A stretch of 64,000 nt of DNA from Phallusia mammillata (GCA_965637545.1 OZ281501.1:19530001-19594000); one strand, 5' to 3'; positions 31,936-59,262 are shown, numbered from the stretch's first letter. Numbers and translations: made by a program. Notes: generated by a model not told the origin, from the sequence alone.

Positions 31936-34624
31936 TTAGAAAAGTTGTTGCATGAAAAATCCAATGATCGCTAGGACCGATACAATCATCAGGTTTTGAA
32001 GTGGTCGATTGGAAGCATTCATCCCTGAAATAAGTAAGATGTTTTTTCAGTTACCAGTGGAAAGCAAAAACATGATTTATTACAATACCATAATATTGGA
32101 TTGCATACAATTGTCAGATGGGAGGTTAATTTTGTTCGGTTTATTAGAAGTGGTTTGAAAAGATCGTTTTTGTGGTGTTTGTAAATTACCCTAATTGTCG
32201 GTTTACCGGATAATTGGTTTTGAATTATTGTTTTTGCGTTTTTTTGGTGTTGGTAAGATACCTTGGTTGCAGCCGTCCAAGATGCATGTTTTGTTGCATT
32301 CCATAAAAGTTGTTTGGTCGATCACACTTTCTGAACATCCGTTGCCGATTTCAACATGCGCACAACCCCGGGTGATTGACCTTGTGTAACCTGTGCGACC
32401 GTGCAGAACTTGACCTGGAAATATTGTTGGTTGTCAGCATTAGGTGTTAAGGCATATCTCACTGGTTGCTATGGGCGACACGAACCTGTTAAATCGCCCG
32501 ACTTTCCGATATCGTGGTAGTAACACCGAGACATAAACGGCCAAACACATTGTGTGGGGGCGGGAGGGTTGAACAGACATTCGTCATAACCATCAGCAGT
32601 GCCGGACGATGAACATTGACTGCACGTGGGACGGTTGGCTGCAAATTTAAAAGTCATACTGTTAAGAGTATACAAGTAGTTTTGTGAACGAACACTATAT
32701 TGTGGTCAGTTTGATTTTGGCCATCGTAGGTTAATTACAGGAGTTATTTTGATTTTTGCGCTGAATAGAAAAACCGCAGAACTTACGCCACCCGATGTTA
32801 CATCCGTCGATTTGACAGCTTTCCTGACAAACTGTTTTGTAGCCGCTTGTTGTTCCTAGTTGGGTTTCTGTGCATTGCGCAGTGAGGGCGCTTGTTCCGC
32901 ATCCACGCTCGATCGAAACGAACTTGTATTCAGGCAAAGCTGGAAAAAAATATCGATGTAAAGTTGTGGATAGCGTTACTGAAACACCGCGCAAAAAACT
33001 TCCAAAAAAGCAAAAACATAGTTGCTAACGCTAGTGCTAAAGCGCTTGTAACTTTCTACCTTCGTTGGTGCTGAGGTCGGTCTTGTTGGAAGTGTAATAA
33101 GTCGTTGTCGCATAGCAGTGTGTGGACGCAGCGGGGCAGAGTGTCCTGCTGACAGTTGACGATGCGCAACTACCCGAGTCAATTACATCTGTGCACTGGA
33201 GGCAGTATAGAGCAGTTATTTCACTTCCATCCAATAATCCGTTTGCTGCGGAAATAAATTTTCAGTTATGCGTGTTGTGGACGTTTAGTTTTCATGTTGT
33301 GCAAGTTACGTGTTGCTGTGTTGCAGTTGTCAGTTGCGCACGTGCTTACGCATGTGTATTCGTTATATGCGCTGTACTGAGGGTCGGTAGGAGTGGAGAA
33401 AAAGCATTCATCTCTGTAGTTTAGCTCAGTAGCGCAGCCTCTCACAGCCCTGGTACGCACCACATTTTCACCTGCGCAAAAAAATCATTTTTTTTTCTGC
33501 TTGACCTCACATATCTTGCATCAACTTACTGTCGTCAAAGAGGGTCGTGTGAGTTGTGGTGCAGTAGTTTTGTGTTGTAAGTGGACAAGTGCTTCCTGTG
33601 GTTCTGCTTGCACAAGTGGAGTCAGTTTCTTCATCGCATTGAACACAACTACGAAATGCTGAGGTTGAAACTGTGCAAAAAATGTTTATCATTTAATTAA
33701 CAACTGGTAGGGGCTTTTCCAAATCTGCGCTTTATGTGTAGATGAAAAGGCAAAGCACTGATAAAGTTACCTGTGGTTGAACAGTCCGCTCCAGTGAATC
33801 CCGAGTTACACATGCAAGTTCCCGTAAAATAATCGCAGTTCCCTTGTCCTAAGTCGTTTGAGCAGTTGCTCTGGCAAACCTGAAGATTGTCTGCAATCGA
33901 AATATCCGAAGTTAATTTAGAATCATTCCTGCTTCGAAGTAATGTTTAACTCCATGTTTATGTTTTATTTATGACTGCACTAATTTCAAGTAATATTTAA
34001 AACAAGTAAAGTTAGGTCTTTTTGGGATTAGGACGAACTAACGGTTTGAGCTTACTTGTTGTCACCGTGTTGCAGTTGTTCGTTGTACATGATTGTTGGC
34101 ATGTTGTTCTTTCCACACCATTGTTGAATGATGTTGAGCATTTTGTGGTTGTTGGAGCACCAGTTTCAGTTGTAACTGGATCGCTTGATCCGTCATAACA
34201 TCCACGCTGGACACTCACCACTAAACCTGAACGGTAACACAAGCATGTAAAAATATTTTCGAAATGCTCTGGTTTTTAGGTCTTTATAATTTCGTCCGCA
34301 GCTAAAGGTTTGCAAATATGTGAAAGACTAACAGCAATTTGCGGCCTACCGTCATCTATCTCAAAAGTTGCGTGGCAATATGGAGAGCTTGTGGTTGGGC
34401 ACGTGATGAATGCGACGCTTGTAGCTCTGTCGTAACAATCGTTGTTGATGTAAGGCTCTCCGTTGAAGTAAGATTGGGAACAAAACCGACAGGTCCTTGT
34501 GATTTGTCCTGGTAAAACCCAATGCATCGAGTTAACTGGTGAACCAAAACACAAACATTTCATGTAACTCACCATTTACGAGCACCAAAGAAACCGCAAA
34601 GATTGTCAACAACAACAACTTCAT
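31936..34624 (-). CDS. Array copy A (divergent): signal peptide + LU1 + EGF + LU2 + LU3 + LU4 + GPI-type tail, about 521 aa
   Basis: Eleven exons: 34624-34573 (MKLLLLTIFAVSLVLVNG), 34535-34350, 34226-34056, 33890-33771 (EGF), 33670-33530, 33471-33310, 33245-33060, 32939-32787, 32638-32486 (donor least certain), 32414-32262 and 32024-31936 (GMNASNRPLQNLMIVSVLAIIGFFMQQLF*). All introns are phase 1. Each LU domain reads CxxC..C..C..C..RGC..C..CxxxCxxxxCN. Confidence 0.85.
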
Positions 34625-36033
34625 TTTTTCAAATAACCAGTTTACAACTATCACCTAATCCTACTTCTGCAAAACAAAACACATATTGCTATAAACCAGA
34701 ATAAGGTTATGAACAAAACGTTTCCACCAGCGCTCTGCCTTCGACAAAGTTCTGATTTATCTGTTTAATCACAAAATGCCTACATTTCTACTCCTCTGAC
34801 ACAAACTTGCATTTTCTGTCTACATTGAACTAAAACGTAGAAAATCGAAATGTTTGCTAGTACGAAAAATAAATTATCGCGCGTGCTGAGACTGCTCGGA
34901 CCCACCCTGCTTGCTTTCAATCTCCAAGCTTAAACTAAAGTGGTTATTTGTAATTACCTGAGTTGATCTTGCATTTATGTCATAAAGCAAGTTTTTTAAT
35001 CACAAACTCCGCGTTAGTATTTTGTGCGTCATAAAACCTCGTTGGTTTCAACACTCCCTGAATAAACTTGACTCTCGATTAGCATTAACTCTTGCACTAA
35101 TACTACTTTCACAACACTAGAATAACGTTTGCCAAGCCATGGTGTAAACTTGGTCACCACTATGGGTAGACAGAGAGATATGTTTTGCGCATACAACGTT
35201 GTGACAATGTATGAGAAGCTTACCTTCCAAGGTACCTGCAAAAAAATATTTAACCAAACTTAATATCATGAAATTATTCAGATTAAGTGCTTTTATATGG
35301 GGTCGCGTGAAACTTAAGGTGTTGTTTTGTTAAAGTATATTTTGAAATTACCCATGCATTTAGCAAGCATTTAGCTTTTTGACGGAAGATTAGCATTAAT
35401 GCTGTATTAAATAATGCTTATACATGTTGTTAGAATGTTATCACTGTGGTTCAGGTTTTTCGTTGGTGATGTTTACCATTTTAGTACATATGTTCGATGT
35501 TCAACATTTAGTATGTACAACGGACAATATTAAAATGTGTCGCTGAAATCTAAAGGCTTTAGCCCGAAAAACAAAAATGTGTTTGGCATACAGCCTACAA
35601 AACTGGTGCAATTATTGCGCACAGAAGATTAGCAACTTTATAATCTTCTAAACAAACTGCAAATTAGCTTTTCAGAACATTGGATACTACTGTTGGTTTA
35701 TTAAATTCAAACTTCTTGAACAAAATTATATATATAACATGCAATAATTACAATCTCAAAATTATAAAATGTGGGAAATTATCTACACTACGTGAACTAA
35801 CATTAGACAAACACATCAAATTATGTAAAATACACAGCAATGCACAAATAACAGAATTAAATTTTCATGCTCGTCGAAACTGAACAGTCCACTCCAGTTC
35901 TACATCCGGCAACAAATTATTCGCCTTCATTTGGAATCGGAGAGGTGGAAACAACAATTGATGGGGAAATTGGTGAATTACTGAAATTACAGTGAGTGGT
36001 TGGTGGGATATTTACACTGAGTTGTTTGGTCGG

Positions 36034-38394
36034 TTAAGCGGTTTGCTGAAGAAGGTAGCCGAGCATAGCGGTGACAAGGATCACCAACACATTCTGCACT
36101 GGAGAAGTTGATCCGCTGCCTGTAACAGAGCGAGAAACAATTGAAGTTCATCAATGAAGTTTTTCCCTAGTGATGCAATATGCACAGAAATCCCGACCAA
36201 CGCGCATAACCGATATTTTAAATCAATATTATTCGAATATTATTCTTTAATATTGTGGGTTGAACAGTTTTTATCTACAATTTTTGGTTTGCGTAACAGA
36301 ACTTAAATATAGCGCACCTTGGTTGCATCCATGTCCTGTGCAGGTTCTGTTGCACATTCTGTAATCGATTCCATCAACAGTAGTCTCGTTGCAGCCGTTG
36401 CCTTGATCGAAGAAAGCGCATCCTCTGACGACTTCTGAAGTAAATCGTTCCTTTGAACTTTCCGGACCTAAACATTTTCACAACATGTACATTTTGGCCC
36501 CCAACCATTGTGATGCTCCTAAAATTTTAGTTTGCTTACCGATTTCCCTGACGAAGCAGTATTGGTGAGCAGGATTGGAGCAGACAGTTGCCACTGGTGG
36601 GTTTTTAAGGCAAATGTCGTATCCAGCCACAAGTCCGTCAAAGCTAGATGAAGATCTTTGAGTACTGCATTGCACACATCTGCTTCGGGTTGCTGTAAAA
36701 AAAATTGTGAACAAACTTTATTTTCCAATCTAGAAAGTTTTAAGGACGGAAGTAAAACTTACGAAATCCTACGTTGCATCCGTCTTCAGTGCAGCTTTCC
36801 TCGCAAGTCACTCTCAATGCGCTGCTTGTTCCAAGTGTTGCGTTCGTGCAAGAATTCACAGATGTTGTGGAATCACGGCATCCGCGTTCAATTGATTCAA
36901 TCCAAACATCGGGATTAGCTGAACAACAATCCACAATAAAGCACAAAGAAAGTTTGATTCAAACACGAACCACGTACCTTGGTGTCGAAGATCGCCTTTT
37001 TCCTGGTAGTAGTAGATAATTTTTGAGTAGCACTGATTCGCTGCACCTTGGCAAAGTGTTCTTCCGGTTGCGGTGGTGCATGAGTGAGAATTTCCGGTTC
37101 CTGTACATTGTACGCACTGGAGAGCTCTATCTGCGGCCGCTACAACTCCATCAGCTGCAAACATTCACTTGTCAACCTCGCTGTTTTCCATATTATTGCT
37201 TGTGCTTACGTGTTCCTGTGTTGCAGTCATCGGTCTGACAAGTACTGGTGCAGGTCTGTTCAGTGTGGTCGGTGAATCTGGTGTCAGAAGGGTTAGAAAA
37301 CTCGCATCGGTCTTGGAAGTTGTTGGTTGTTGTGCATCCGCGGGTTATTCGGCTCGCCACCACGGCCCCAACTAAAACATACGTGAATATATGAAAACAT
37401 AAAAGTTTTTTTTTCATCTGGACTGATCAAAACTTTTGTTCACTTACCGGTATCATACAGGGTAGTTCTAGTTGTTGTGCAGTAAACATTTGCAGCCGGC
37501 TGATTAATAGAGCAAGCTGTTCCTGCTGTTTTTGTGGCACAAGTGCTGTCAGTTTCCTGGGAGCATTGGACGCAAGAACGACGGGTAATTGTCACTGTGT
37601 GTAGAAAGTTGGATAAATTTGTAATGGTCGCAAATCTGATGTTAATATTTACCTGCAGTTGTACAATTAGTTCCCATGAAATCTCCCACACAAACACACT
37701 GACCAGTGAAGTAATTGCAATATCCGTTGTTCATGCATGTTGATGCGCATGACATCAAGCTGTCTATAAGTTAATAGTATCTATATTATCTTGTAATGTT
37801 TAGCGAGGTGGTATCAACTTACTCGGTGCGATCGTGTTGCAGTTATTAGTTGTACAAATATGGTAGCAAGTTGTCTCTGCAACATTGCTGTTGGCGCCGA
37901 ATACTGTGTTACACTTTGGCGATGCTGGGACGGTGTTTATTGTCGTGTCAAAGTCGGCAGGAGTTTCAGCATCTTGTCTGCTTCTCATCATCAGGCTCAG
38001 AACGCCTAAACAGATTTATCAAGACATGCAACTTCAAGTCCAGTAACGTAATTCACTTATTCTCACCGTCGCTGAACACACTTCTGGTTAAGCAATATGG
38101 AGTCATAGATGAAGTTACAGTTGGTGGGGTTAAGTTAGTTGCGTTGTCGTAGCAATGGTTGTTGGTCTGAGTCTGGTCAAAGAAGCCCGTTGTCGTGCAC
38201 TCTATACATGACCTGTTTGTTTGGCCTAAAAAATGTCGTTGTTAGAAATTGTTAGATGATCTTCCACCGCATATTAATATTTTTCAAGAACCTCAGACAT
38301 TTACATTATTTAACTTTTATTAACCTTAAAACTTACCATTCACAGAAACGAAGCAGGCAACCGCCATCATCACACAAACTGTCGACAACTTCAT
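36034..38394 (-). CDS. Array copy B: 4xLU + EGF GPI-type surface protein
   Basis: ATG at 38394 (MKLSTVCVMMAVACFVSVNG), the same 11-exon phase-1 layout, and a last exon 36119-36034 reading GSGSTSPVQNVLVILVTAMLGYLLQQTA*. Confidence 0.85.
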
Positions 38395-39325
38395 TTTTAT
38401 CACTTATTTAACGTTTTTAAATTAAACAAAAAGTTTCCTACAACCTGAAAAACAGAACAACAACAACACTTAGCGGTTGAAAGTCGGATTCTTTCAAAAC
38501 GAAACTAAATTGGATTCTTAGTTTTTTTGCCTATTAATCTGAAGCTGCAAAAACAAATTTAACTTTGAAAAGTTTTGACCGCGTTCCGTCGAACCTGAAA
38601 GTAAAAAGATATCAGTATTAAAAAAACTAGTTTTATCTTTGACAAAATTGTTAATGCTTGATTTTTTTCTCTATGGCGTTTGTGTTTAATATGGTGATAT
38701 AAAAAGAATCCTCCAAAACGCCCAAAACAATCTAATTTTTCTGTCACAAAGATGTGAGTTAAAAACAAGTTCCCGCCGTATGTCGTTTTAAGTTTCTGTT
38801 TTTTTGCCACGGCAAAGCATTGCAGAAGTTATGAAGTTTTAATAAACTCTGGTTTTGATTGATGTCGCTATACATCGACAAATTGAAATTCGTTTACAAT
38901 TTTCTTCAGTTAAATGGCGTGTTGGATGAAGTTTGTTCGCCAAATTTGCCGCTGTAACGTTTAGTGTGAGGATATTTGGTGGAGAATTGAAAGCTACTCT
39001 TAAAGGTTTTCCACACAGAAAAGTTTTTGGTTCAAGTTTTCGTTGCAAGTAATTGTCTGGCTTTATGTGCAAGTTCGATTTTGGTTTAAATTATTTTTAG
39101 TCAATTTTAGTCAATTCGCTTGGGCACTTTCAGTTGAACGGTTAATTATTAACATTATTACTGTGGGTCATTTTAAACAGGGTCTGACCTATTCGAACGA
39201 GGCTCTGTTTTAAAATATTCGGTTTTTGTGCGAATTTGAAAACGCTGCCGGGAAACAGAGCATCCTTAGCAGCATCTTGTCCAGACCATACTACTTTGTG
39301 TTGCTTGATACGGGATGCTTTAAAA

Positions 39326-39565
39326 CAGGGGTGTGCAGCCCGAGTCCAATTGTTCTATATTTTGAGCAGATTAATGCGTCCGGTGCTATTTTTCTCCGAC
39401 CTGACAATATGAGGCTAGAATCAAATGGGAATTTTACTTGTATTTGTTAAATAGGCATATTTGGTACGCAACAAGGTAAAATCACCTAATATTAAAGGTG
39501 TGGCCCGCGATCTAATTATTGTAACTGTATTTGGCCCCAAAGTGACAAAGGTCGCACATCCCCCG
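39326..39565. mobile_element. hAT-type MITE in the B-C spacer
   Basis: caggggtgtgc ... gcacatcccccg, with 8-bp flanks ctttaaaa / gtttaaaa. Confidence 0.65.
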
Positions 39566-40659: not shown

Positions 40660-43176
40660 TTACAACGAGAAGAATCGTTGCAAAGAATATCCGACGAGTG
40701 GAGGGAGAGACATCATCAGCAAATTCTGCAATGGCATCACAGACCCGTTGCCTGTCAACAAAACTTTTTTAAATACTCGATCAAGTGGGTTTCGCTTTTT
40801 ATTTAAAGCGGCAAATCATATTAAGTGCGACTTCATTTGTCGAAAACGCTTGGGAACGTAGAATTCTGGGTATTTATATTCTGAGGCAGTTGTTTGTTGC
40901 ATTTTATATTAGGACGCCTTTTTGTCCAGTTTTAATTGGAAGTGGATTCCTAAACTTTATTAAACTTTTCACAAATCAACTTTGGTGCAAAAAGACGCAG
41001 GAAAATGTGACTGGTTTACACTTGCATGTTTTATCGTAACACGCACCTTGGTTGCAACCATGTCCTGTGCAGGTTCTGTTGCACACCCGGTAATCGACCC
41101 CGTCAACAGTAGTCTCGTTGCAGCCGTTGCCCTGATCGAAGAAAGCGCAGTCTCTGACGACATCTCGGCTGAAACCTTCTCTGTCTTCACCTGAACCGAA
41201 AAAGTTTGGGTCAGAAACGGCACTTACTGTTTTAACCAACAAGTTTGCTTACCGGTTTCCCTTACGAAGCAATATTGTTCAGCAGGGCTTTCGCAGACAG
41301 TTGCCACTGGTGGGTTGTTCAGGCAAATGTCGTATCCAGCCACAAGTCCGTCAAAGCTGGACGAAGATCTTTGAGTCCTGCATTGCACACAGCTGCTTCG
41401 GTTTGCTGGGGGAAAGTTAAGGTAAACATCTAAACTGGGATCAGTCCTAAAGCGCCGATGCAGACCAGTACAATAAAATATTTTTAAACTAGAACGACCG
41501 AAGTGAAACTTACGAAATCCGACGTTGCATCCGTCTTCAGTGCAGCTTTCCTCGCATGTCACTCTCAATGCGCTGCTTGTTCCAAGTGTTGCGTTAGTGC
41601 AAGAGTTTACAGATGTTGTGGAATCACGGCATCCGCGTTCAATTGATTCAACCAATACATCGGGATCAGCTGAACAACAATCCACAATAAACACAAAGGA
41701 AGTTTGATTCAAACACGAACCACGTACCTTGGTGGCGAAGATCGCCTTTTTCCTGATAGTAGTAGATAATTTTTGAGTAGCACTGATTCGCGGCACCTTG
41801 GCAAAGTGTTCTTCCGGTTGCGGTGGTGCATGAGTGAGAATTTCCGGTTCCTGTGCATTGTACGCAATAGAGAGCTCTATCTGCGGCCGCTACAACTCCA
41901 TCAGCTGCAAACATTCACTTGTCAACCTCGCTGTTTTCCATATTATTGCCTGTGCTTACGTGTTCCTGTGTTGCAGTTATCGGTCTGACAAGTACTGGTG
42001 CAGGTCTGTTCAGTGTGGTCGGTGAATCTGGTGTCAGAAGGGTTGGAAAACTCGCATCGGTCTTGGAAGTTGTTGGTTGTTGTGCATCCGCGGGTTATTC
42101 GGCTCGTCACCACAGCCCCAACTACAAGAAAGCGAATAAAATGGTTGAAAATCGTGCTTACCAGGAACAGAATATACTTTAATTTGCCTTTCACAGCTTC
42201 TCATTTTTGAAATAACTTACCGGCATCGTACAGGGTAGTTCTAGTTGTTGTGCAGTAAACATCTGCAGCCGGCGAGTCAATAGAGCAAGCTGTTCCTGCT
42301 GTTTTTGTGGCACAAGTGCTGTCAGTTTCCTGGGAGCATTGAACGCAAGAACGACGGGTAACTGTCACTGTGTGTAGAAAGTTGGATAATTTTGTGATGA
42401 TCGCAAATCTGATGTTGATATTTACCTGCAGTTCCACAACCAGTTCCACTGAAACCTGAATTGCAAACGCACTGACCAGTGAAGTAATTGCAATATCCTT
42501 GGTTTGTCGTGCATGTTGATGCGCATGACATCAAGCTGTCTGTAAGTTGCAACAGGTGATTTATCTTGTGATGATAAGTAATAATGTTGTAAGGTATCAA
42601 CTTACTTGCTGTGATCGTGTTACAATTGTCAGTTGTACAAGTATGGTAGCAAGTTGTCAGTTCAATTCCGTTGCCGAATACTGTATTACACTTTGGCGAT
42701 GTTGGGACGGTGGTTATTGTGGAGTCAAAGTCACTTGATGCATCTTGAACGCTTCTTTCCACAGATCTTAGGTTTCCTTAACAACAATATTCTGTCAATA
42801 CCTGCACTTAATCAACCAAATGTAGCCACTTAATCTTACCGTCGGCGATTGTGAACGTGGTGAGGCAATATGGTGTTGTGACTGTTGTCAATGACGCTGT
42901 TGGTAAGTTGGTCGTGTTGTCATAGCAATGGTTGTTGGTCTGAACTTCGTCATAAAACTGAATAGTAAGTGAGCATATTCTGCACATTCTTGTGGTCGTT
43001 GTTTGGCCTAGAGAGAAAGGAAATTTTACATTATGAGAACACCTTGCCCCGCTTGTAAATATTTCTCAAGAAACTTAGGCATTTACATTATTTAACTTTT
43101 GTTAAACTTAAAACTTACCATCGACCGAAACGAAGCAGGCAACCGCCAACATCACACAAACTATCGACAACTTCAT
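40660..43176 (-). CDS. Array copy C: 4xLU + EGF GPI-type surface protein
   Basis: ATG at 43176. LU1 begins RMCRICSLTIQFYDEVQTNNHC, the EGF reads SCASTCTTNQGYCNYFTGQCVCNSGFSGTGC, and the tail is GNGSVMPLQNLLMMSLPPLVGYSLQRFFSL*. Confidence 0.83.
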
Positions 43177-45773: not shown

Positions 45774-48641
45774 TTACAACGAGAAGAATCGTTGCAAGGA
45801 ATATCCGATGAGTGCAGGGAGAGACATCATCAGCAAACTCTGCAATGGCATCGCAGACCCGTTGCCTGCAAACAAAACTTTGTTTAAATACTCGACCAAG
45901 TGTGTTTCGTTTACTTCATTTGTCGAAAACGCTTTTGAACGTAGAATTCTGGGTATTTATCTTCTGAGGCAGTCGTTTGTTGCATTTTATATCAGGACGC
46001 TTTTTGGTCCAGTTCTTATTCAAAGTGAATTCTTAAAGTTTATTAAACTTTTCACAAATCGACTTTGGTGCAAAAAGTCACAGAAAAAGTAACTGGGTTA
46101 CACCGGTATGTTTTATGGTAACACGCACCTTGGTTGCAACCATTCCCTGTGCAGGTTCTGTTGCACACTCGGTAATCGACCCCGTCAACAGTAGTCTCGT
46201 TGCAGCTGTTTCCTTGGTCGAAGAAAGCGCATCCTCTGGTGACGTCTCGGCTGAAACCTTCTCTGTCTTCACCTGAACCGCGAAAGTTTGGGTCAGAAAT
46301 GTCATTTTCCACTTTCATTGACAAGTTTGCTTACCGATTTCCCTGACGAAGCAATATCGATGAGCAGGGCTTGTGCAGACAGTTGCCACTGGTGGGTTGT
46401 TGAGGCAAATGTCGTATCCAGCCACAAGTCCGTCAAAGCTGGATGAAGACCTTTGAGTACTGCAGTCCACACATCTGCTGCGGTTTGCTATAAAAAGATT
46501 GTCAACAAACTTTATAATTTCCAAACTGGAAACAGCGCTGAAGCGTTTATGCAGAACAACGATCACGGCACACTTATTATATGTATAAACCATAATACGC
46601 CAGGCCCATTGAACGAGTCTTATCGAATCAGCCGGTCACCAAGCATTCCCGTATATGACAAGACATAAATTAGAGAAATCTAGCATGCAGTGGGATTCGA
46701 ACCCATGTCAGGGGCCATTTTCACGTCTTGCGCTTTATCAACTGTTCTAAACAGGCTACGTGTCGAGCCATAATTCAATCGGTCTGGCGTACAGTGAAGT
46801 ATTTCCAAACTAGAAAGGTTTAACGACCGAAGTGCAACTTACGAAATCCAACGTTGCATCCGTCTTCAGTGCAGCTTTCCTCGCATGTCACTCTCAATGC
46901 GCTGCTTGTTCCAAGTGTTGCGTTAGTGCAAGAGTTCACAGATGTTGTGGAATCACGGCATCCTCGTTCAATTGATTCAATCATAACATCAGGATTAGCT
47001 GAATAGCAATCCACGTTAAAGCACAAAGAAAACAGTAAAACCAACGGACGATAAAATTCTTGCTAGAACAGAATACTAAGGTTTTTATCGTCCTTTGGTT
47101 TTACTCTAATAAAAAAAAGCAAACAGTGATCGTCAGTTTAAGTCGTGCTGTGATGGTTTTCATCGATTACTAAAGTTGTCATTTTGAAAGCACAACAATT
47201 CAAACACGAACCACGTACCTTGGTAGCGAAGATCGCCTTTTTCCTGGTAGTAGTAGATAATTCTTGTGTAGCACTGATTCGCTGCACCTTGGCAAAGTGT
47301 TCTCGCGGTTTGAGTGATGCATGAAGAACCTCCGGTTCCTGTGCATTGTACGCACTGGAGAGCTCTATCTGCGGCCGCTACAACTCCATCAGCTGCAAAC
47401 ATTCACTTGTCAACTTCGCTGTTTTCCATATTATTGTTTGTGCTTACGTGTTCCTGTGTTGCAGTTATCGGTCTGACAAGTGCTAGTGCAAGTCTGTTCA
47501 GTGTGATCGGTGAATCTGTTGTCAGAAGGGTTGGAAAACTCGCATCTGTCTTGGAAGTTGTTGGTTGTTGTGCACCCGCGGGTTATTCGGCTCGTTACCA
47601 CGGCCCCAACTACAACAGACGTGAATAAAAATATTAAAGTTTTTTTCCGTCTGAGCTTGTCACAACATTTGCTTTTGTGCATTTTTAAAATAACCTACCG
47701 GCATCATACAGGGTAGTTCTAGTTGTTGTGCAGTAAACATTTGCAGCCGGCATATTAATAGAGCAAGCTGTTCCTGTTGTTTTTGTGGCACAAGTGCTGT
47801 CAGTTTCCTGGGAGCATTGGACGCAAGAACGACGGGTAACTGTCACTGTGTGTAGAAAGTTGGATAAATTTGTGATGGTTGCAAATCTGATGTTGATATT
47901 TACCTGCAGTTCCACAATCAGTTCCACTCCAATCTCCCGCACAAACGCACTGACCAGTGAAGTAGTTGCAATATCCGTTGTTCATGCATGTTGATGCGCA
48001 TGACATCAAGCTGTCTGTAAGTTGCAGCAATAAGTGATTTATCTTGTAATGATAAGTAATAACGTTGTCATATGTCAACTCACTTGCTGCGATCGTGTTG
48101 CAGTTGTTAGTTGTGCAAATATGGTAGCAAGTTGTCATTTCAATTCCATTGTTGAATGCTACTTCGCATTTTGGCGATGCTGGGACGGTTGTTATTGTGG
48201 AGTCAAAGTCACTTGCAGCATCTTGTCTGGTTCTCGTCATCATGCTCAGAACACCTAAACAGATTTGTCAAAACATGAAACTTCAAGTTTACTAACTCAA
48301 TTCACTTAATCTCACCGTCGCGGAAAACGCTCGTGGTTAAGCAATATGGAGTCATAGATGAAGTAGCAGCTGGTGGGATTAAGTTAGTTGCGTTGTCGTA
48401 ACAATAGTTGTCCGTCTGAGTCTGGTCAGCATACAAGCCCGTTGTCGCGCACACTATGCATGATCTGTTTGTTTGGCCTGAAAGAAATGTCGTATTGTTA
48501 GACGATCTTGCGTCGTGTAACTAACATTTCTCAAGAAACTCAGACATTTGCATTATTTATCTTTTATTAAACTTAAAACTTACCATTGACAGAAACGAAG
48601 CAGGCAACCGCCAACATCACACAAACTATCGACAACTTCAT
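45774..48641 (-). CDS. Array copy D: 4xLU + EGF GPI-type surface protein
   Basis: ATG at 48641. LU1 begins RSCIVCATTGLYADQTQTDNYC, and the tail is GNGSAMPLQSLLMMSLPALIGYSLQRFFSL*. Introns in the LU3/LU4 region are enlarged by insertions. Confidence 0.83.
46540..46790 (-). mobile_element. tRNA-derived SINE-like insertion in the LU3b-LU4a intron of copy D
   Basis: The minus strand reads catGGGTTCGAATCCcactgcatgc, a B-box at about 46693-46703. A homologous insert sits at the same intron in F and G and is absent from B, C and E. Confidence 0.45.
47034..47106. repeat. Small palindromic insertion unique to copy D (LU3a-LU3b intron)
   Basis: agtaaaaccaacggacgataaaa ... ttttatcgtcctttggttttact inverted arms. 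Confidence 0.6.
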
Positions 48642-49775: not shown

Positions 49776-50103
49776 CAGGGGTGTGCAGCCTGCAGCCCAC
49801 CGGCCAAATACGGCCCTTGATTAAAGGTTGTGCAGTCCGCAGTGACGCTTGGTTTTCAAATGTACTGGCAAACGAGTCCAGTTAATATATATTTTTAAGC
49901 AGATTAATGCATCCGGTGCTATTTTTCTCCGACCTGACAATATGTGGCTAGAATCAAATGTGTATTTTACTTGTAATTGTTAACTCAATATAGGCATATT
50001 TGGTATGCAACAAAGTAAAATCACCTTGTGTTAAAGGTGCGGCTCGCGATCTAATTATTGAAATTGTATTTGGCCCCAAAGTGACAAAGGTTGCACACCC
50101 AAT
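49776..50103. mobile_element. hAT-type MITE in the D-E spacer, homologous to the one at 39326
   Basis: gtttaaaa|caggggtgtgcagcc ... ggttgcacaccc, at the same position within the duplicated spacer. Confidence 0.6.
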
Positions 50104-51165: not shown

Positions 51166-53635
51166 TTACAACGAGAAGAATCGTTGCAAGGAATATCCGA
51201 TGAGTGCAGGGAGAGACATCATCAGCAAACTCTGCAATGGCATCACAGACCCGTTGCCTGCAAACAAAACTTTGTTTAAATACTTGGCCAAGTGGGTTTC
51301 GTTTTTGTTGAAGCATTAAACTTTTGTAAAGTGCGACTGTGGCGGTTGGACACGTCCCAGGTGCGAAGTAATCACGAGTAACATATTCAGGTGCAATCAA
51401 TAAAAGCAGAGTTTGATCGCTAATACTTGTGCGTACGGATCGAAAACCCAAATAGTTAAACTTTATTACAAACCTTATTTCTGAACAGTGGCGTTTTAAA
51501 TTCTTACTGCCTAGTTGAGACACCGGTTTGTTTTATCGTAACACGCACCTTGGTTACAACCATGTCCGGTGCAGGTTCTGTTGCACACTTTGTAATCGAC
51601 CCCGTCAACAGTAGTCTCGTCGCAGCTGTTGACCTGGTCGAAGAAAGAGCATCCTCTGACGACTTCTCTGCTGAAACCTTCTCTGTCTTCACCTAGACCA
51701 AGAAAGTTTGGGTCAGAAACGTCACTTTTAACTTTCACTGACAAGTTTGCTTACCGGTTTCCCTGACGAAGCAATATCGATGAGCAGGGCTTGAGCAGTC
51801 AACTGCAATTGATGGGTTGTTCAGGCAAACGTCGTATCCAACCACAAGTCCGTTGATGTTGAGAGTAGTTCCCCCAGTGGATGCCGCGACGGATCTTTCA
51901 GTACTGCATTGCACACATCTGCTGCGGTTGGCTGCAAAAAGATTGTCAGCAAACATTAGTATTTCCGAATTAGAAACGTTTTAACGACCGAAGTGAAACT
52001 TACGAAATCCTACGTTGCATCCGTCTTCAGTGCAGCTTTCCTCGCATGTCACTCTCAATGCGCTGCTTGTTCCAAGTGTTGCGTTAGTGCAAGAGTTCAC
52101 AGATGTTGTGGAATCACGGCATCCGCGTTCAATTGATTCAATCATAACATCGGAATCAGCTGAATAGCAATCCACAATAAAGCACAAAAAAAGTTTGATT
52201 CAAACACGAACCACGTACCTTGGTAGCGAAGATCGCCTTTTTCCTGGTAGTAGTAGATGATTCTTGAGTAGCACTGATTCGCTGCACCTTGGCAAAGTGT
52301 TCTGTCGGTTCGAGTGTTGCATGAGGAACCTCCGGTTCCTGTGCATTGTACGCACTGGAGAGCTCTATCTGTGGCCGCTACAACTCCATCAGCTGCAAAC
52401 ATTCACTTGTCAATTTCGTTGTTTTCCATATTATTGCTTGTGCTTACGTGTTCCTGTGTTGCAGTTATCGGTCTGACAAGTACTGGTGCAAGTCTGTTCA
52501 GTGTGGTCGGTGAATCTGCCGTCAGAAGGGGCGGAAAACTTGCATCTGTCTTGGAAGTTGTTGGTTGTTGTGCATCCGCGGGTTATTCGGCTCGTCACCA
52601 CGGCCCCAACTACAAGAAAGCGAAAGAACTAGTTTAAAATCGTGTTTAACGGGAACAGAACATACTTGAATTTTGCTTTTCACAGCTTCTCATTTTTGAA
52701 ATGACTTACCGGCATCGTACAGGGTAGTTCTAGTTGTTGTGCAGTAAACATTTGCAGCCGACATATTAATAGAGCAAGGTGTTCCTGCTGTTTTTGTGGC
52801 ACAAGTGCTGTCAGTTTCCTGGGAGCATTGGACGCAAGAACGACGGGTAACTGTCACTGTGTGTAGAAAGTTGGATAAATTTGTGATGATTGCAAATCTG
52901 ATGTTGATGTTTACCTGCAGTTCCACAATCAGCTCCACTCCAATCTCCCACACAAACGCACTGACCAGTGAAGTAGTTGCAATATCCGTTGTTCATGCAT
53001 GTTGATGCGCATGACATCAAGCTGTCTGTAAGTTCCAGCAATAAGTGATTTATCTTGTGTTGTTTAGTGATAATGTTGTCAGGTATCAACTTACTTGCTG
53101 TGATCGTGTTACAATTGTCAGTTGTGCAAGTGTGGTAACAAGTTGTCAGTTCAACTCCTTGGCTAAATACTGTGTTGCATTTTGGCGATGTTGGGACGGT
53201 TGTTATTGTGGTGTCAAAGTCACTTGATGCATCTTGTCTGCTTCTGTCCACAGATCACAGGTTTGCTTAACAAAATTCTGTCAATACCTGCACTTATCAA
53301 CTAACTGTATCCTCCACTTAATTTACCATCGGCGATTGTGAACGTGGTGAGACAATGTGGAGTGACGGATGATTGCAACATAGATGCTTCATTTGTCGAG
53401 TTGTCATAGCAGTGGTTGTTGTTCTGGTCTTGGTCATAGTGCATGGAATTCGAACATACTCTGCACATTCTGTCCACATTTGTTTGGCCTGGAAATAAAT
53501 TAATAAACAACAATTGAACAAAACTCCTGTAACGTGGGCATTCGTATGATTCATCTTTTGTCAAACTTAAAACTTACCATTGACAGAAACGAAGCAGGCA
53601 ACCGCCAACATCACACAAACTATCGACAACTTCAT
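51166..53635 (-). pseudogene. Array copy E: full exon set but with an in-frame TGA in exon 3 (probable null allele or pseudogene)
   Basis: Exon 3 reads ttaag|CA AAC CTG TGA TCT GTG (TGA at 53257-53255), where copy C has ttaag|GA AAC CTA AGA TCT GTG. I found no nearby AG that restores frame past the stop. Confidence 0.65.
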
Positions 53636-56602
53636 TATTATCACTTATTTAATGTTTTTTAATTAAACACAAAGTTTCCTACAACCTGAAAAACAGAACA
53701 ACAACACTTAGTGGTGGAAGGCGGATTCTTTCAAACAAAACTAAATCAGGCTCTTAGTTTTTTTTGCTATTAATCTAAAACTGCAAAACAAGTATAATTT
53801 TGACAAGTTTTGACCGTTTTCCGTCGAATCTGAAAGTAAAAATATCGGTGTCAGTAAAAACTATTTTTTTTCGCTCTGGCAGAATTAGGAATAAAAAATG
53901 TTTTACTGATTTTTTTATTGCAAGATTTTTGTCTCATGCTGGTAATAAATTTTATTTCCCTGAACGTCCAAGGGTCGTCTAATTTTCCCTGTTACAAAAA
54001 AAATTTCCTTATGTTGCTTAACAATGTGTTTATTTTATTCGATAACTGGTGTTGTTAAAATTGGTGTACACACTTTTTTGGGTTTTTTATATGTTTTTAT
54101 GACTTCTTTTGTAATATCTGCTTCAGCCAAAACTGATGGATTTAAACAGGTGACGTAATTGGTTGATTGCAAGCAGCTGCAAATTTTGTTTTTACAAATT
54201 TTTAGTTTAGTATGAACGCTGAGTAAAAACGAGCACATGTTTTGAACAGATCCGTTTAAATGCGGTTGCTTGACTTTCTTCAGGTTTGTAACACCAATAT
54301 TGTGAGGTTTGAATGCTGCCGCTGTGTATGGACAAATTGATATACGTTTACTGTTGCCATCAGTTACATGGCGTTTTGAGTTTAGATTGCTTGCCAGATT
54401 TGCATCTTTAACGTTAAGTTTTTGAATGTTTGGTGACCAAATAAAAGTTACCCTAGTGGTTTGCAAAACATGAGAGTTTTTTTCTGCGTGTTTTCTTCGC
54501 GAGTAATGTTCTGGTTTTATACGCAAACTCTCTGAAGCAAAATTTTGTTTGGGCACTTTCAGTTGAACGGTTAATTGTTAATATTATTGCTGTGGATTTC
54601 TTACTCGGGTGATTCGTTTTAAAGATCCGGGTTTTATGCGAATTTGAAAACGTTCTCGGGAAACAGAGCATCGTTAGCAGCGTCATGTCCAGACTAAACT
54701 ATGTTGTGGTGCTTAATACGGGTTGGTTTAAATATCACTTCAGCTACCCTAGCAGGTGAAACAAGGAATTTTGTGAGGTTTAAAGCTTTTTGAACTTGTT
54801 TCTACTCTATGATCTGAATGACTATTAGTTTGTGTGAGGTCATGTCTAGTATTACGGTGCGGCGAGATTTTAGTTTTGGTTTGGTTGCGCTAAAAATTAA
54901 GCGGAGCAAAAAAGGGTGTGAAGTTTCACGGATGAGTGATTACGTCACGGTTGGCATGGTAACGACTGGTAGCATTAGGGTTTTGTCATGCGGAACGTGA
55001 CGTTAAAACATTTCCAACCCGTGCACAAAGTTGCAAAGTTACACTAAAGATTTTTGCTGCAATTTATTTTTAAACTTTGAATTGACCGCTCGATACAAAT
55101 TTTGAAAAATGTGGAAATTTATTTAGCAACAGGATATTCGGTCAATATGTTTGCTCCGGCGAACGCTGTATTTTTCCCGTACAAATGTTATTGCATGTGA
55201 TTAAAACCGCTTAAAAATTTTTAGTCAACCAGTATTACTCGCATAAATGTTGACACACGCAGCCATGTTTAATTTGAAATGGCACGTAAGTTGTCAAACA
55301 GCTTTTAAAAACTTGCCGAGCCTTGATATGCAGTTTGTAACTGAAACAATAGACAATCAAAGTTGCCAAAAATGAAAACTCTCATACGATTTAATTCGAC
55401 GCATTTCGCAACTCTAGGAAATTTATCTGCGAAATATATTGAAAAGGTATAGATGCGTAAAAAGTGTTGTCGTTAGAAAACGGTGTGAAACTTGTTACAT
55501 CAGGTTTGAAGGTATACGTCGTAAATTAAAGTATGAAAACATAAAAATTATGGTAAAATGACCAAACAGTTGATGACACAAAGCGCGTCTTCCAGGAGCT
55601 TTATCTGAAAATGCTGTCAATACGAACCCAACCGATTTGAAAGTTGTAACAGAAAATCAGGTTATAAATGAAATAACTATATGTAATTCTGCTTACGAAT
55701 TAGTTTTCTGGATTATTTCATTAACATTAGATAACAAAGTTAATTTGCCGAAAAGTTACTGGACTAAACAACAAGGTATTTCGTGTTTCAGTTTTGTGGT
55801 TATCAAGGAACATGGTTGTTTTACAAAGCATGGGAACATTTTTTTTACTTTATTAAACGACGATGCATTTTGCCTTTACGTGCTGTGATAGTTTTAACCC
55901 ATTTAACCCATGCCTAAAGGGTGGCGCATGCTTTTCTCGTTGTCGTGGAAACAAGCGGCAAGTTTTCATGCAAGATGTGATTCAGGGTTTAAACCACAAA
56001 ATTGTTTGTCTAGTGTTTCTCAAAATGAGCGCAAACGCATTCATGGGGCTGTTCGCAATAATGGTCGGGCGCTGGAATAAATCTGGGCAGTTGGAACCCT
56101 AAGCAGGGACAAATGAAATTCGTTCACATATCCATTTAAACATCCAACATGAGCAACTTGGGTAAATGTATTTGTAAAATCGATTCCTACGGAAATTCGA
56201 TCTTGGTCAACCGGTGTCAGTGTATAAACCGTGGTTAAGTTTTTTTAAAGAAACTGTTTTGCAAATGGCAAGCAGTTTAGGGTAGTGATAAGGAAAACTG
56301 TTTAAAAACACTGGTTTGGTCAATAATAATTAAATGCGTGCAGTTAACGCTACAACATGCAAAATGTACAACATTGTACGCTTGTGCAATAAATATGGAA
56401 AATTTGTATTTGATGACATGCAGGTCACATTCAGAATTGAGCCAACTGTAAAAGTCAGCAATCATGCAAAGAATAGAAACTGCTTCGATAAATTTACAGT
56501 GAAGGTTTATAACCGGAGTTTAACACTACAAAATATAATCTACATCATGCAAATCACACAGTTAAAACGTCACCCAGCAAACAAACAAATTCTCTGTCCA
56601 TT

Positions 56603-59262
56603 TTACAACGAGAAGAATCGTTGCAAGGAATATCCGATGAGTGCAGGGAGAGACATCATCAGCAAACTCTGCAATGGCATCGCAGACCCGTTGCCTGCAA
56701 ACAAAACTTTGTTTAAATACTCGGGTTTCGCTTTTTAGTTGAAGCCGCAAGTCAAGTTAAGTGCGACTTAATTTGTCGAAAACGCTTGAAAGCGTAAAAT
56801 TCTTGGTATTTATTTTCTGAGGCAGTTGTTTCTTGCATTTTATATCAGGACGCTTTTTTGTCTAGTTCTTATTGATAGTGGAATTTTAAACTTTATTAAA
56901 CTTTTCACGATACAATTCTGGTGCAAAAGGCGCAGGAACTGTGACTGGTTTACACTTGTATGTTTTATTTTAACACGTACCTTGGTTGCAACCATTTCCG
57001 GTGCAAGTTCTGTTGCACATTTTGTAATCGACCCCGTCAACAGTTGTCTCATTGCAGCCGTTGCCCTGATCGAAGTAAGCGCAGCCTCTGGTGACTTCTC
57101 GAGTGAAACCTTCTCTGTCCTCACCTGAACCGAGAAAGTTGGTGTTTAGAACAGCCATTTTCAACTTTCACTGACAAGCTTGCTTACCGGTTTCTCTGAC
57201 GAAGCAATATTGTTCAGCAGGGCTATCGCAGCGTGCTGCCACTGTTGGGTTGTTGAGGCAAACGTCGTATCCAGCCACAAGTCCGTGGTAGTTGGTTAAT
57301 TCTCTTTGAGTACTGCATCGCACACATCTGCTACGGTTGGCTGGAAAAAGTTAAGATAAACATAAGATCTAAACTGGTATCAGTTTTAAAGCGTCGTTGC
57401 AGACCAGCAATCACGGCACACTTATAAATCACACGCCAGTCGCCAGGCCTATTGAACCAAACACTCAGCATTCCGTCATATGGCTAGGCGTAGGCTAGAA
57501 AAATCTGGCATGCGGTGGGATTTGAACCCATGTTCGCATCTTGCGCTCGATCAAGGCTCAGTGGCGAGCCTAAATACAAGGTCTGGACGTACAATTAAAT
57601 ATTTTTCGAACTGGAAACGTTTTGACGACGAAAGTGCAACTTACGAAATCCGACGTTGCATCCGTCATCAGTGCAGCTTTCCTCGCATGTCACTCTCAAT
57701 GCGCTGCTTGTTCCAAGTGTTACGTTAGTGCAAGAGTTCACAGATGTTGTGGAATCACGGCATCCGCGTTCAATTGATATAATCCAAACATCGGGATTAG
57801 CTGACCAACAATCCACAATAAAGCACAGAGAAAGTTTGATTCAACCACGAACCACGTACCTTGGTGGCGAAGATCGCTTTTTTCCTGGTAGTAGTAGATA
57901 GTTTTTGTGTAGCACTGATTCGCTGATTCGCGGCAAAGTTTTCTCGCGGTTGCATCAATGCATGTGTGGCCATTGCCTGTTCCTGTACATTGTACGCACT
58001 GGAGAGCTTTATCTGCGGCCGCTACAACTCCATCAGCTGCAAACATTCACTTGTCAACCTCGCTGTTTTCCATATTATTGCTTGTGCTTACGTGTTCCTA
58101 TGTTGCAGCCGTCGGTCTGACACGTGCTGGTGCAAGTCTGTTCAGTGTGGTCGGCGAATCTGGTGTCAGAAGGGGCGGAAAACTCGCATCTGTCTTGGAA
58201 GTTGTTGGTTGTTGTGCATCCGCGGGTTATTCGGCTCGTTACCACGGCCCCAGCTACAACATACGGGAATAAAAGTAATAAAGTTTTTTTGTCTGAGCTT
58301 GTCTCAACTTTTGCTTTTAATATTGCCTTACCGGCATCGTACAGGGTAGTTCTAGTTGTTGTGCAGTAAACATTTGCAGCCGGCGAGTTAATAGAGCAAG
58401 CTGTTCCTGTTGTTTTTGTGGGACAAGTGCTATCAGTTTCCTGGGAGCATTGGACGCAAGAACGACGGGTAACTGTCACTGTGTGTAGAAAGTTGGATAA
58501 ATTTGTGATGATTGCAAATATGCTGTTGATATTTACCTTCAGTGCAATTAGTTCCCATGAAATTTCCCACACAAACGCACTGACCAGTGAAGTAATTGCA
58601 ATAACCTCCGTTCATGCATGTTGATGCGCATGACAACAAGCTGTCTGCAAGTTGCAACAAGTGAATTATCTTGTGATGTTTAGTGATAATGTTGTCAGGT
58701 GTCAACTTACTTGCTGCGAGAGTGTTGCAGTTGTTAGTTGTACAAGTGTGGCGGCAGGTAGTTACTTCAACTCCGTTGCCGAATACTACTTCGCATTTCG
58801 GGGATGCTGGGACGGTGGTTATTGTCGTGTCAAAGTCACTTGCAGCATCTTCTCTGGTTCTCGTCATCATGCTCAAAACACCTAAACAGATTTATCAAAA
58901 CATGAAACTTCAAGTTCACTAACTCAATTCCTTTATTCTCACCGTCGCGGAAAATGCTCGTGGTTAAGCAATATGGAGTCATAGATGAAGTAGCAGGTGG
59001 TGGGGTTAAGTTAGTTGCGTTGTCGTAGCAATGGTTGTCGGTCTGGTCTTCGTCGTAAAAACCCGTTGTCGCGCACTCTATGCATGATCTGTCTGTTTGG
59101 CCTGAAAAAATTTCGTATTGTTAGACGACCTTGCGTCGTGTTTAACATTTCTCAGAAAACTCGGACATTTACATTATTTAACTTTTATTAAACTTAAAAC
59201 TTACCATTGACAGAAACGAAGCAGGCAACCGCCAACATCACACACACTATCGACAACTTCAT
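56603..59262 (-). CDS. Array copy F: 4xLU + EGF GPI-type surface protein
   Basis: ATG at 59262. LU1 begins RSCIECATTGFYDEDQTDNHC, LU3 has HTCIDATARKLCRESANQC, LU4 has RCVRCSTQRELTNYHGLVAGYDVC, and the tail exon is intact. Confidence 0.83.
57400..57600 (-). mobile_element. SINE-like insertion in copy F, homologous to those in D and G
   Basis: The minus strand reads catGGGTTCAAATCCcaccgcatgc, with shared flanks gtacg(t)ccagacc and ataagtgtgccgtgat. Confidence 0.4.

What the first reader, a model, noticed from the sequence alone, without database searches (positions are those of the whole stretch)
33900..59110. Paired loss of Cys4 and Cys6 (one whole disulfide) in LU1 of all the young copies
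Seen in sequence: copy A LU1 has all 10 Cys, including ITC4PTTSSPYC5 and QRGC6Y. In B, C, D, E and F both positions are non-Cys. At Cys4 they read PPTVTSS, PTASLTT, PPAATSS, EASMLQS and PPPATSS; at Cys6 they read RSRQ, RSVQ, RTRQ, RSRQ and RTRE. The other eight Cys remain. Established knowledge: LU disulfides pair 1-5, 2-3, 4-6, 7-8 and 9-10, so exactly one bonded pair was lost, across two different exons. In uPAR domain I it is the 7-8 bond that is missing, and that loss is tied to ligand-binding flexibility. Inference: this supports the fold assignment independently and suggests a structural change in the membrane-distal domain before the expansion.
Basis: partly seen in the sequence, partly recalled or inferred. 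Interest (0 to 1): 0.75.

Follow-up and report, generated by a model that had tools for sequence, protein, structure and literature searches.

The report
Tunicate Ly6/uPAR domain missing core disulfide
In a tandem family of tunicate cell-surface proteins built from four Ly6/uPAR (three-finger) domains and one EGF module, the outermost domain of five copies has lost both cysteines of one normally invariant core disulfide, a real but single, lineage-specific event whose structural effect is still untested.

Summary
On the minus strand lies a tandem array of 11-exon genes: signal, LU1, EGF, LU2, LU3, LU4, GPI tail. All splice sites are canonical and all introns are phase 1. Copy A has 10 Cys in LU1. 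Copies B-F have 8, lacking exactly Cys4 (Val/Leu/Ala/Leu/Ala) and Cys6 (Arg/Val/Arg/Arg/Arg).

The C3-C5 spacing is the same in A and B, so the Cys4 column is ungapped. All other LU domains in the window (21) keep 10 Cys.

Homologues were found only in tunicates (Ciona, Styela). All of their LU1 domains keep Cys4 and Cys6. A groups with B-F (99/99), so the loss is one event on the B-F stem.

LU1 still shows purifying selection (dN/dS 0.3-0.5).

- LU1 is not young. The two LU1 types differ at dS 0.7-1.0, while LU2/LU3 are homogenised.
- Copy E has an in-frame stop in LU1.
- The pairing is only weak support for the fold (1 in 9 by chance).
- Contigs from runs only guessed to be RNA confirm the e3/e4 and e4/e5 junctions, not e2/e3.

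The scan had noted this gene family before, at the window's edge.

The parts
31936..34624 (-). Copy A, complete 11-exon gene (signal, LU1, EGF, LU2, LU3, LU4, GPI tail). LU1 has all 10 Cys.
   Evidence: Gene model with canonical splice sites, 512-codon ORF.
34350..34508 (-). A exon 2 (LU1 first half, Cys1-5). Cys4 codon TGC at 34399-34401.
34056..34226 (-). A exon 3 (LU1 second half, Cys6-10). Cys6 codon TGT at 34198-34200 in the motif RGC.
36034..38394 (-). Copy B (LU1 type 1), intact 513-codon ORF. LU1 exons 38067-38225 and 37823-38005. Cys4 column Val (38116-38118), Cys6 column Arg (37977-37979). Its GPI-tail exon differs from that of C-G.
40660..43176 (-). Copy C (LU1 type 2), intact ORF. 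LU1 exons 42840-43007 and 42606-42776. Cys4 column Leu (42889-42891), Cys6 column Val (42748-42750).
45774..48641 (-). Copy D (type 1), intact ORF. LU1 exons 48316-48477 and 48084-48254. Cys4 column Ala (48365-48367), Cys6 column Arg (48226-48228). Its e4/e5 junction appears spliced in a contig from a run guessed to be RNA.
51166..53635 (-). Copy E (type 2). LU1 exons 53327-53488 and 53095-53265. Cys4 column Leu (53376-53378), Cys6 column Arg (53237-53239). In-frame TGA at 53255-53257 (C has AGA at the same place), so it is a probable pseudogene.
56603..59262 (-). Copy F (type 1), intact ORF. LU1 exons 58943-59101 and 58711-58881. Cys4 column Ala (58992-58994), Cys6 column Arg (58853-58855).
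62156..64000 (-). Copy G, partial. Exons 6-11 are modelled (62156-63856) and the 3' end of exon 5 matches at 63946-64000. LU1 lies beyond the window, so its Cys state is unknown.

Best explanation
B-F are members of a tunicate-specific family of GPI-anchored surface proteins with the layout signal, LU1, EGF, LU2, LU3, LU4, GPI. The family expands in tandem independently in different species.

After the duplication that separated A from the ancestor of B-F, the N-terminal (membrane-distal) LU domain lost both cysteines of the plesiotypic 4-6 disulfide. This bond is one of the four core bonds of the three-finger fold. The likely sequence is one substitution first, then rapid loss of the orphaned partner.

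The resulting 8-Cys LU1 should keep bonds 1-5, 2-3, 7-8 and 9-10. It then diverged into two old LU1 types and was carried through further tandem duplications. The rest of the gene was kept similar by gene conversion. LU1 remained a selected, presumably folded domain.

Shown: the sequence facts, the phylogenetic placement, purifying selection, and transcription and splicing of downstream exons.

Inferred: that Cys4 and Cys6 were bonded; that the domain still adopts a three-finger fold; and that removing the bond loosens the base of fingers I and II and changes binding properties, by analogy with the missing 7-8 bond of uPAR DI.
For: Gene models and Cys census:
- All 21 other LU domains in the window have 10 aligned Cys, with the motif R-G-C at Cys6.
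- All 14 database homologues (4 Ciona intestinalis, 10 Styela clava), plus one ENA contig (L001), keep Cys4 and Cys6 in LU1.

Phylogeny and selection:
- A+(B-F) forms a clade at 99/99, with a stem of 0.57 substitutions per site (98/96).
- LU1 dN/dS is 0.31-0.49 in every B-F pair. The eight other Cys and the C10-Asn are invariant, although the two types are only 60% identical in LU1.

Family and fold:
- Ciona P0004 passes the Pfam QVR (u-PAR/Ly-6-like) cut-off (32.9 > 27.3).
- 8 of 16 homologue LU domains hit QVR and 3 hit UPAR_LY6 over the full profile length.
- The AF2 model of the window's own LU2 (pLDDT 76) has uPAR and C4.4A as its best Foldseek matches, with prob 0.96-0.99.

Literature and transcription:
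- The consensus pairing and the known erosions (2-3 common, 7-8 rare, 4-6 not listed) are in PMC6600238.
- Contigs from runs guessed to be RNA show the spliced D e4/e5 junction and a type-2 e3/e4 junction exactly at the modelled sites.
Against: - No transcript covers the e2/e3 junction of any copy.
- E has a premature stop. The B-F stem is long, so some relaxation of constraint is possible.
- The LU fold is assigned from weak individual scores. Exon-wise Pfam on the window gives only E 0.036. Profile searches of the PDB find nothing. Foldseek E-values are 0.08 or worse, and VIA Z is at most 4.
- The 8-Cys LU1 itself was never folded, and no disulfide connectivity was observed for any member.
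- Arg is an unusual replacement for a buried half-cystine.
Confidence: 0.78

Rival explanations
1. LU1 of B-F is a decaying domain. After duplication the N-terminal domain lost constraint, and the missing cysteines are early damage in genes on their way to pseudogenes, or to a protein whose LU1 is only a disordered, glycosylated spacer.
For: - E carries an in-frame TGA in LU1.
- LU1 is the most divergent part of the copies.
- The segment around the former Cys4 is rich in Pro, Thr and Ser, and all five copies gained an N-x-T sequon just after Cys3.
- The B-F stem is long.
Against: - dN/dS in LU1 is 0.31-0.49, no higher than in LU3 or LU4.
- All eight remaining Cys and the C10-Asn are invariant across two LU1 types that differ at dS 0.7-1.0.
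- Four of the five copies have intact ORFs and all have canonical splice sites.
- Downstream exons are transcribed and spliced.
- A-versus-B dN is similar in all domains (0.44-0.66), so LU1 was not singled out.
Confidence: 0.12
2. Annotation artefact. The real transcripts use other exons or splice sites that restore the cysteines, or the LU1 exons belong to a different transcript.
For: - No RNA contig covered e2 or the e2/e3 junction.
- The species' proteins are not in the protein collections searched.
Against: - Cys4 lies inside exon 2 between Cys3 and Cys5, in an ungapped 19-residue stretch, so no splice variant can supply it.
- Exon boundaries are the same in A, in B-F and in all four LU domains. 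All are phase 1 and all fall between Cys5 and Cys6.
- A stop codon lies directly upstream of the e3 acceptor.
- The e3/e4 and e4/e5 junctions seen in RNA contigs fall exactly at the modelled sites.
Confidence: 0.03
3. The two lost cysteines were not partners. This divergent tunicate family uses a non-canonical connectivity, as the salamander pheromone PMF does, so B-F lost halves of two bonds or re-paired the rest.
For: - PMF keeps the eight conserved Cys but pairs them 1-2, 3-6, 4-5, 7-8 (PMC4029566), so Cys order alone does not prove connectivity.
- The LU1 model of Ciona P0010 is of low confidence (pLDDT 61; the first 30 residues are below 50).
- Cys8 and Cys9 are separated by three residues here rather than adjacent.
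Against: - An even, clean loss of exactly the consensus 4-6 pair with the other eight retained is what co-loss of partners predicts.
- Loss of two non-partners would leave two unpaired Cys, yet those eight Cys are strictly conserved.
- Full-length matches to the QVR and UPAR_LY6 profiles support a canonical domain.
Confidence: 0.05

Closest known systems
N-terminal LU domain of mammalian multi-LU GPI proteins (uPAR DI, C4.4A/LYPD3, Haldisin/LYPD5, TEX101, CD177)
   Same: Both are GPI-anchored proteins with several consecutive LU domains, each LU domain encoded by two exons with phase-1 introns. In both, it is the N-terminal, membrane-distal domain that lacks one plesiotypic core disulfide while the following domains keep theirs (PMC6600238). 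uPAR and C4.4A are the best structural matches of the window's LU2 model.
   Different: The mammalian proteins lack the 7-8 bond, which stabilises finger III. Here 7-8 is present and 4-6 is missing. That bond ties the end of finger I to the end of finger II. The tunicate proteins have four LU domains plus an EGF module between LU1 and LU2. No sequence-level relation to uPAR was detectable, so any parallel is convergent.
8-Cys three-finger proteins lacking the 2-3 bond (short-chain snake toxins, many Ly6 proteins)
   Same: They are also LU or three-finger domains with four instead of five disulfides, reached by loss of a whole pair.
   Different: The 2-3 bond is the dispensable finger-I bond and its loss is common. 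The 4-6 bond (called 2-4 in 8-Cys numbering) belongs to the canonical core, which is reported as shared by more than 200 solved structures (PMC4029566; PMC6600238).
Plethodontid modulating factor (PMF), a hypervariable salamander three-finger pheromone
   Same: It is a three-finger family under lineage-specific gene amplification in which the canonical core disulfide network was altered.
   Different: PMF keeps all eight Cys and re-pairs them, is secreted, and has a single domain. Here two Cys are deleted in one domain of a GPI-anchored five-module protein, and positive selection was not detected (pairwise dN/dS < 1).
Uncharacterised Ciona intestinalis and Styela clava proteins (for example LOC100182096, LOC108949271, 'EGF-like domain-containing protein comC', LOC120329939)
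   Same: They have the same architecture and length (about 506-533 aa): signal, LU1, EGF, LU2, LU3, LU4, hydrophobic tail. They are 33-47% identical to one another and to the window copies, and are tandemly expanded in Styela.
   Different: All of them keep Cys4 and Cys6 in LU1. None has a described function.

Membership tests
Ly6/uPAR (LU) three-finger domain | Ten plesiotypic Cys in consensus order, with Asn directly after Cys10 | tested here: met
   Met in copy A LU1, in all LU2-LU4 of A-G (21 domains in the window, counting A LU1), and in the homologues' LU domains. B-F LU1 keep eight of the ten plus the C10-Asn. That deviation is the finding itself.
Ly6/uPAR (LU) three-finger domain | All four core disulfides (1-5, 4-6, 7-8, 9-10) present | tested here: not met
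   B-F LU1 lack both Cys of 4-6. Accepted LU members such as uPAR DI also lack one core bond (PMC6600238). Membership here rests on descent from a 10-Cys LU1.
Ly6/uPAR (LU) three-finger domain | Domain encoded by an exon pair with symmetrical phase-1 boundaries, split between Cys5 and Cys6 | tested here: met
   All four LU domains of all copies have this structure. The generic structure is described in PMC6600238.
Ly6/uPAR (LU) three-finger domain | Significant match to an LU-clan profile (Pfam UPAR_LY6, QVR, Toxin_TOLIP) | tested here: inconclusive
Window exons scanned singly give only QVR E 0.036 for LU3b and nothing for LU1. Homologue P0004 passes the QVR cut-off (32.9 > 27.3). Of 16 homologue domains, 8 hit QVR (best 2e-5) and 3 hit UPAR_LY6.
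Ly6/uPAR (LU) three-finger domain | Three-finger fold | tested here: inconclusive
   The window LU2 model (pLDDT 76) has uPAR and C4.4A on top, with prob 0.96-0.99 but E of 0.08 or worse. The Ciona LU1 model (pLDDT 61) has TGF-beta receptor II, BMPR2 and TEX101 on top at E about 0.1, and VIA Z of at most 4 with CD177, TEX101 and GPIHBP1. The 8-Cys LU1 was not folded.
Ly6/uPAR (LU) three-finger domain | Cys4 bonded to Cys6 | not testable with these tools
   Model coordinates are not returned and no solved relative was found. This needs disulfide mapping or a structure.
Mammalian-type multi-LU GPI receptors (uPAR / C4.4A / CD177 group) | Several consecutive LU domains, an N-terminal signal and a C-terminal GPI signal | tested here: met
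   Read from the models: a hydrophobic N-terminus, four LU domains, small residues followed by a hydrophobic tail. No GPI predictor was run.
Mammalian-type multi-LU GPI receptors (uPAR / C4.4A / CD177 group) | [quoted passage not shown] | tested here: not met
   Cys7 and Cys8 are present in LU1 of A-F. The missing pair is 4-6.
EGF-like module | Six-Cys EGF signature matching Pfam EGF_2 | tested here: met
   A exon 4 scores 29.1 bits against a cut-off of 22.1. B exon 4 scores 21.4 bits, just under it.

The most novel reading that the evidence does not exclude
Tunicates and mammals may have converged on the same design. In both, a multi-LU GPI-anchored receptor has a membrane-distal LU domain deliberately loosened by deleting one core disulfide: 4-6 here, 7-8 in the uPAR group. 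In the tunicate, this head evolves as old, divergent alleles or types on a stalk kept uniform by gene conversion. That would make the array a variable recognition system (for gametes, self versus non-self, or microbes). It would also make this the first natural three-finger domain shown to fold without the 4-6 bond.
Probability: 0.15. Interest if true: 0.7.

Novelty: new variant of a known kind. Interest (0 to 1): 0.45.

Why it matters
The 4-6 bond belongs to the disulfide core treated as invariant in three-finger proteins. The reviews consulted list natural losses of 2-3 (common) and 7-8 (rare, and functionally important in uPAR), but none of 4-6.

This array offers a natural pair in one genome: copy A with the bond and B-F without it, next to each other and otherwise of the same architecture. 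That is a ready-made experiment on how much of the core a three-finger domain can lose. It also allows a test of whether loosening the outermost domain recurs as a way to new binding functions in multi-LU receptors.

The array is also a clear example of mosaic concerted evolution, with a divergent head and a homogenised stalk. The limits are real: this is a single event in one uncharacterised family of one species, and there is no protein-level evidence yet.

Tried and rejected
- Exon-wise Pfam scan of window exons: only EGF and one weak QVR hit.
- Profile of LU second halves, and profile of 16 full LU domains, against PDB sequences: nothing relevant.
- HMMER search of 1.84 billion representatives with LU3b-intron-LU4a of copy C: only 7 hits, of which one full-length Ciona protein opened the family.
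- Word search with the F LU1b-EGF ORF: no hit. The species and its close relatives are absent from the protein collection, so the loss could not be dated more finely.
- Sequencing-run search: all runs guessed to be RNA hold almost none of the stretch. The single read-laying run gave only short contigs over e3/e4/e5 and none over LU1.
- AF2 of Ciona LU1 from a 16-row alignment: pLDDT only 61, with finger I unmodelled.
- Reading LU1 through intron 2 by reference was considered and rejected. The intron is out of frame in B, D, E and F (61 nt) and contains stops in A and C, which the tools do not accept.
- Positive selection as the driver of LU1 divergence was considered and rejected, because pairwise dN/dS is below 1 everywhere in LU1. 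Site or branch-site models were not run.
- Literature search for a function of the Ciona and Styela homologues found nothing.
Full report
**What is in the window**

The window has no N runs. From about 31.9 kb to its end, the minus strand carries a tandem array with a period of about 5 kb. I built explicit gene models for each copy.

Each gene has 11 exons:
- e1: signal peptide
- e2+e3: LU1
- e4: EGF module
- e5+e6: LU2
- e7+e8: LU3
- e9+e10: LU4
- e11: short Ser/Gly stretch followed by a hydrophobic tail, read as a GPI signal

Every intron is phase 1 with AG/GT boundaries. Every LU domain is split between Cys5 and Cys6, which is the generic LU gene structure described in PMC6600238.

Gene coordinates are A 34624-31936, B 38394-36034, C 43176-40660, D 48641-45774, E 53635-51166 and F 59262-56603. 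G is partial, from the window edge down to 62156. A, B, C, D and F give uninterrupted ORFs of 508-513 codons.

**The observation**

An alignment of all 26 LU domains of the window has ten Cys columns. Twenty-one domains have all ten Cys. The five LU1 domains of B-F lack exactly the fourth and sixth.

- At the Cys4 column the residues are Val (B), Leu (C), Ala (D), Leu (E) and Ala (F).
- At the Cys6 column, inside the otherwise conserved R-G-C motif, they are Arg, Val, Arg, Arg and Arg.

The stretch from Cys3 to Cys5 is 19 residues in both A and B, so no gap is needed at Cys4. Cys4 lies inside exon 2, so no splice variant can restore it.

**Is it an LU domain, and is 4-6 a pair?**

Window exons scanned one at a time give only EGF_2 for e4 (A: 29.1 bits, above the cut-off) and a weak QVR hit for LU3b. 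Half-domain and full-domain profiles find nothing in the PDB by sequence. A HMMER search of 1.84 billion representatives with an in-frame stretch of copy C found seven proteins. One of them was a 506-aa Ciona intestinalis protein of identical architecture.

Word searches seeded with that protein, and then with a four-protein profile, found 14 full or nearly full proteins. All are from Ciona intestinalis, C. savignyi or Styela clava. The window therefore most likely comes from a tunicate. The species stayed coded.

- The Ciona protein passes Pfam's cut-off for QVR, the Quiver u-PAR/Ly-6-like family.
- Of 16 homologue LU domains scanned singly, 8 hit QVR and 3 hit UPAR_LY6 over the full profile.
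- An AF2 model of the window's own LU2, read by reference through an in-frame intron, has pLDDT 76. Its best Foldseek matches are uPAR and C4.4A, with prob 0.96-0.99 and E 0.08-0.18.
- A model of Ciona LU1 is poorer (pLDDT 61). Its best matches are again three-finger receptors and TEX101, CD177 and GPIHBP1, at weak scores.

Taken together, the LU assignment is sound for the family. The 1-5, 2-3, 4-6, 7-8, 9-10 pairing is the published consensus for 10-Cys LU domains. For this family it is inferred, not observed.

**When was the pair lost?**

In a census of LU1, Cys4 and Cys6 are present in all 14 database homologues, in copy A, and in a related gene on an ENA contig (L001). They are absent only from B-F. 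Among those homologues, P0016 (N-terminally truncated) and P0022 lack other LU1 cysteines at the N-terminus, probably through gene-model errors.

In maximum-likelihood trees, A and B-F form one clade (98/96 and 99/99). B-F sit on a long stem of about 0.6 substitutions per site. Styela has its own separate expansion. The simplest history is one paired loss on the B-F stem, after the A/B-F duplication and within the lineage of this species. The five copies are therefore one evolutionary observation. The chance that two randomly lost Cys are partners is 5/45, so the pairing is only modest independent support for the fold.

**The copies are not simply young**

There are two LU1 types: B, D and F on one hand, C and E on the other. 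They alternate along the array, which fits duplication of a two-gene unit.

Between types, exon 2, intron 2 and the start of exon 3 are only 57-69% identical in DNA. LU1 dS between types is 0.70-0.97. From the second half of exon 3 through LU3, identity is 80-99% and dS is 0.07-0.17, regardless of type. The head is old and the stalk is homogenised, most likely by gene conversion.

Divergence of A from B is similar in all domains (dN 0.44-0.66). LU1 was therefore not singled out on the stem.

**Is the 8-Cys LU1 still functional?**

Pairwise dN/dS in LU1 is 0.31-0.49. The eight remaining Cys and the Asn after Cys10 are invariant, although the two types share only 60% of LU1 residues. Splice sites are intact in all copies.

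Contigs from runs guessed to be RNA contain two informative junctions:
- a D e4/e5 junction, with 0 mismatches to D's exon 4 end;
- an e3/e4 junction of a type-2 copy, with 2 mismatches to C and E.

Both are joined exactly at the modelled sites. The e2/e3 junction was not covered.

Copy E has an in-frame TGA at 53255-53257 where C has AGA, eight codons before the Cys6 column. E is probably a recent pseudogene, unless this is an assembly error or a polymorphism.

All five 8-Cys LU1 domains share a derived N-x-T sequon two residues after Cys3 that A lacks. A glycan there might compensate for the lost bond, but this is speculation.

**Comparison with what is known**

PMC6600238 lists erosion of the LU disulfide pattern by loss of 2-3 (frequent) and 7-8 (very rare). 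The 7-8 loss is seen in the N-terminal domain of all mammalian multi-LU proteins, and in uPAR DI it is linked to the flexibility needed for uPA binding. The review mentions no 4-6 loss. PMC4029566 states that more than 200 solved three-finger structures share the canonical core, in which 2-4 is the LU 4-6 bond. It describes PMF as an exception that re-pairs but keeps its Cys. The 2026 invertebrate survey PMC13719153 does not list an LU-EGF architecture among its non-standard ones.

The present case is thus a new variant of a known phenomenon. As in the mammalian proteins, the N-terminal domain of a multi-LU GPI protein has given up a core bond, but a different one, and in an unrelated lineage.

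Joined sequences were used only inside local scripts, for alignment, trees and dN/dS.

Noticed in passing
window 53255-53257 (minus strand): Copy E has an in-frame TGA in LU1 exon 3, where copy C has AGA. The rest of E is intact, so it is a probable recent pseudogene or an assembly or polymorphism issue.
   Followed up: partly
window 36000-59300, copies B-F: The array shows mosaic divergence. Exon 2, intron 2 and the start of exon 3 are 57-69% identical between the two LU1 types (dS 0.7-1.0). From the second half of exon 3 to LU3, identity is 80-99% (dS 0.07-0.17). This suggests gene conversion of the stalk with an old, divergent head. The types alternate (F1, E2, D1, C2, B1), as expected for duplication of a two-gene unit.
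   Followed up: partly
window 36034-36467 (copy B exons 10-11 and the intron between): Copy B has a different start of exon 10 and a different GPI-tail exon from C-G (49-63% identity there versus 80-98% among C-G). Its 3' end has a separate history.
   Followed up: no
LU1 exon 2 of B-F, e.g. window 38140-38160: All five 8-Cys LU1 domains share an N-x-T glycosylation sequon two residues after Cys3 (NAT, NTT or NST). Copy A and most Ciona and Styela homologues lack it. B and F add a second sequon (NLT) just before the former Cys4.
   Followed up: partly
P0012, P0014-P0022 (Styela clava, those with a contig on record lie on one 21.36-Mb contig): Styela clava has at least ten paralogues of the same architecture. 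The seven with a contig on record lie on the same 21.36-Mb contig. This is an independent lineage-specific expansion. P0022 lacks Cys1 and Cys2 of LU1, probably through a gene-model error at the first exons.
   Followed up: partly
L001 4313-11400: An ENA metagenome-assembly contig (ERZ21736675) carries a complete gene of this family with a 10-Cys LU1. It is presumably tunicate DNA in that sample.
   Followed up: partly
whole family: The architecture with an EGF module between LU1 and LU2 is not among the non-standard LU architectures listed in the 2026 invertebrate survey (PMC13719153). NCBI names one Ciona member 'EGF-like domain-containing protein comC'.
   Followed up: partly
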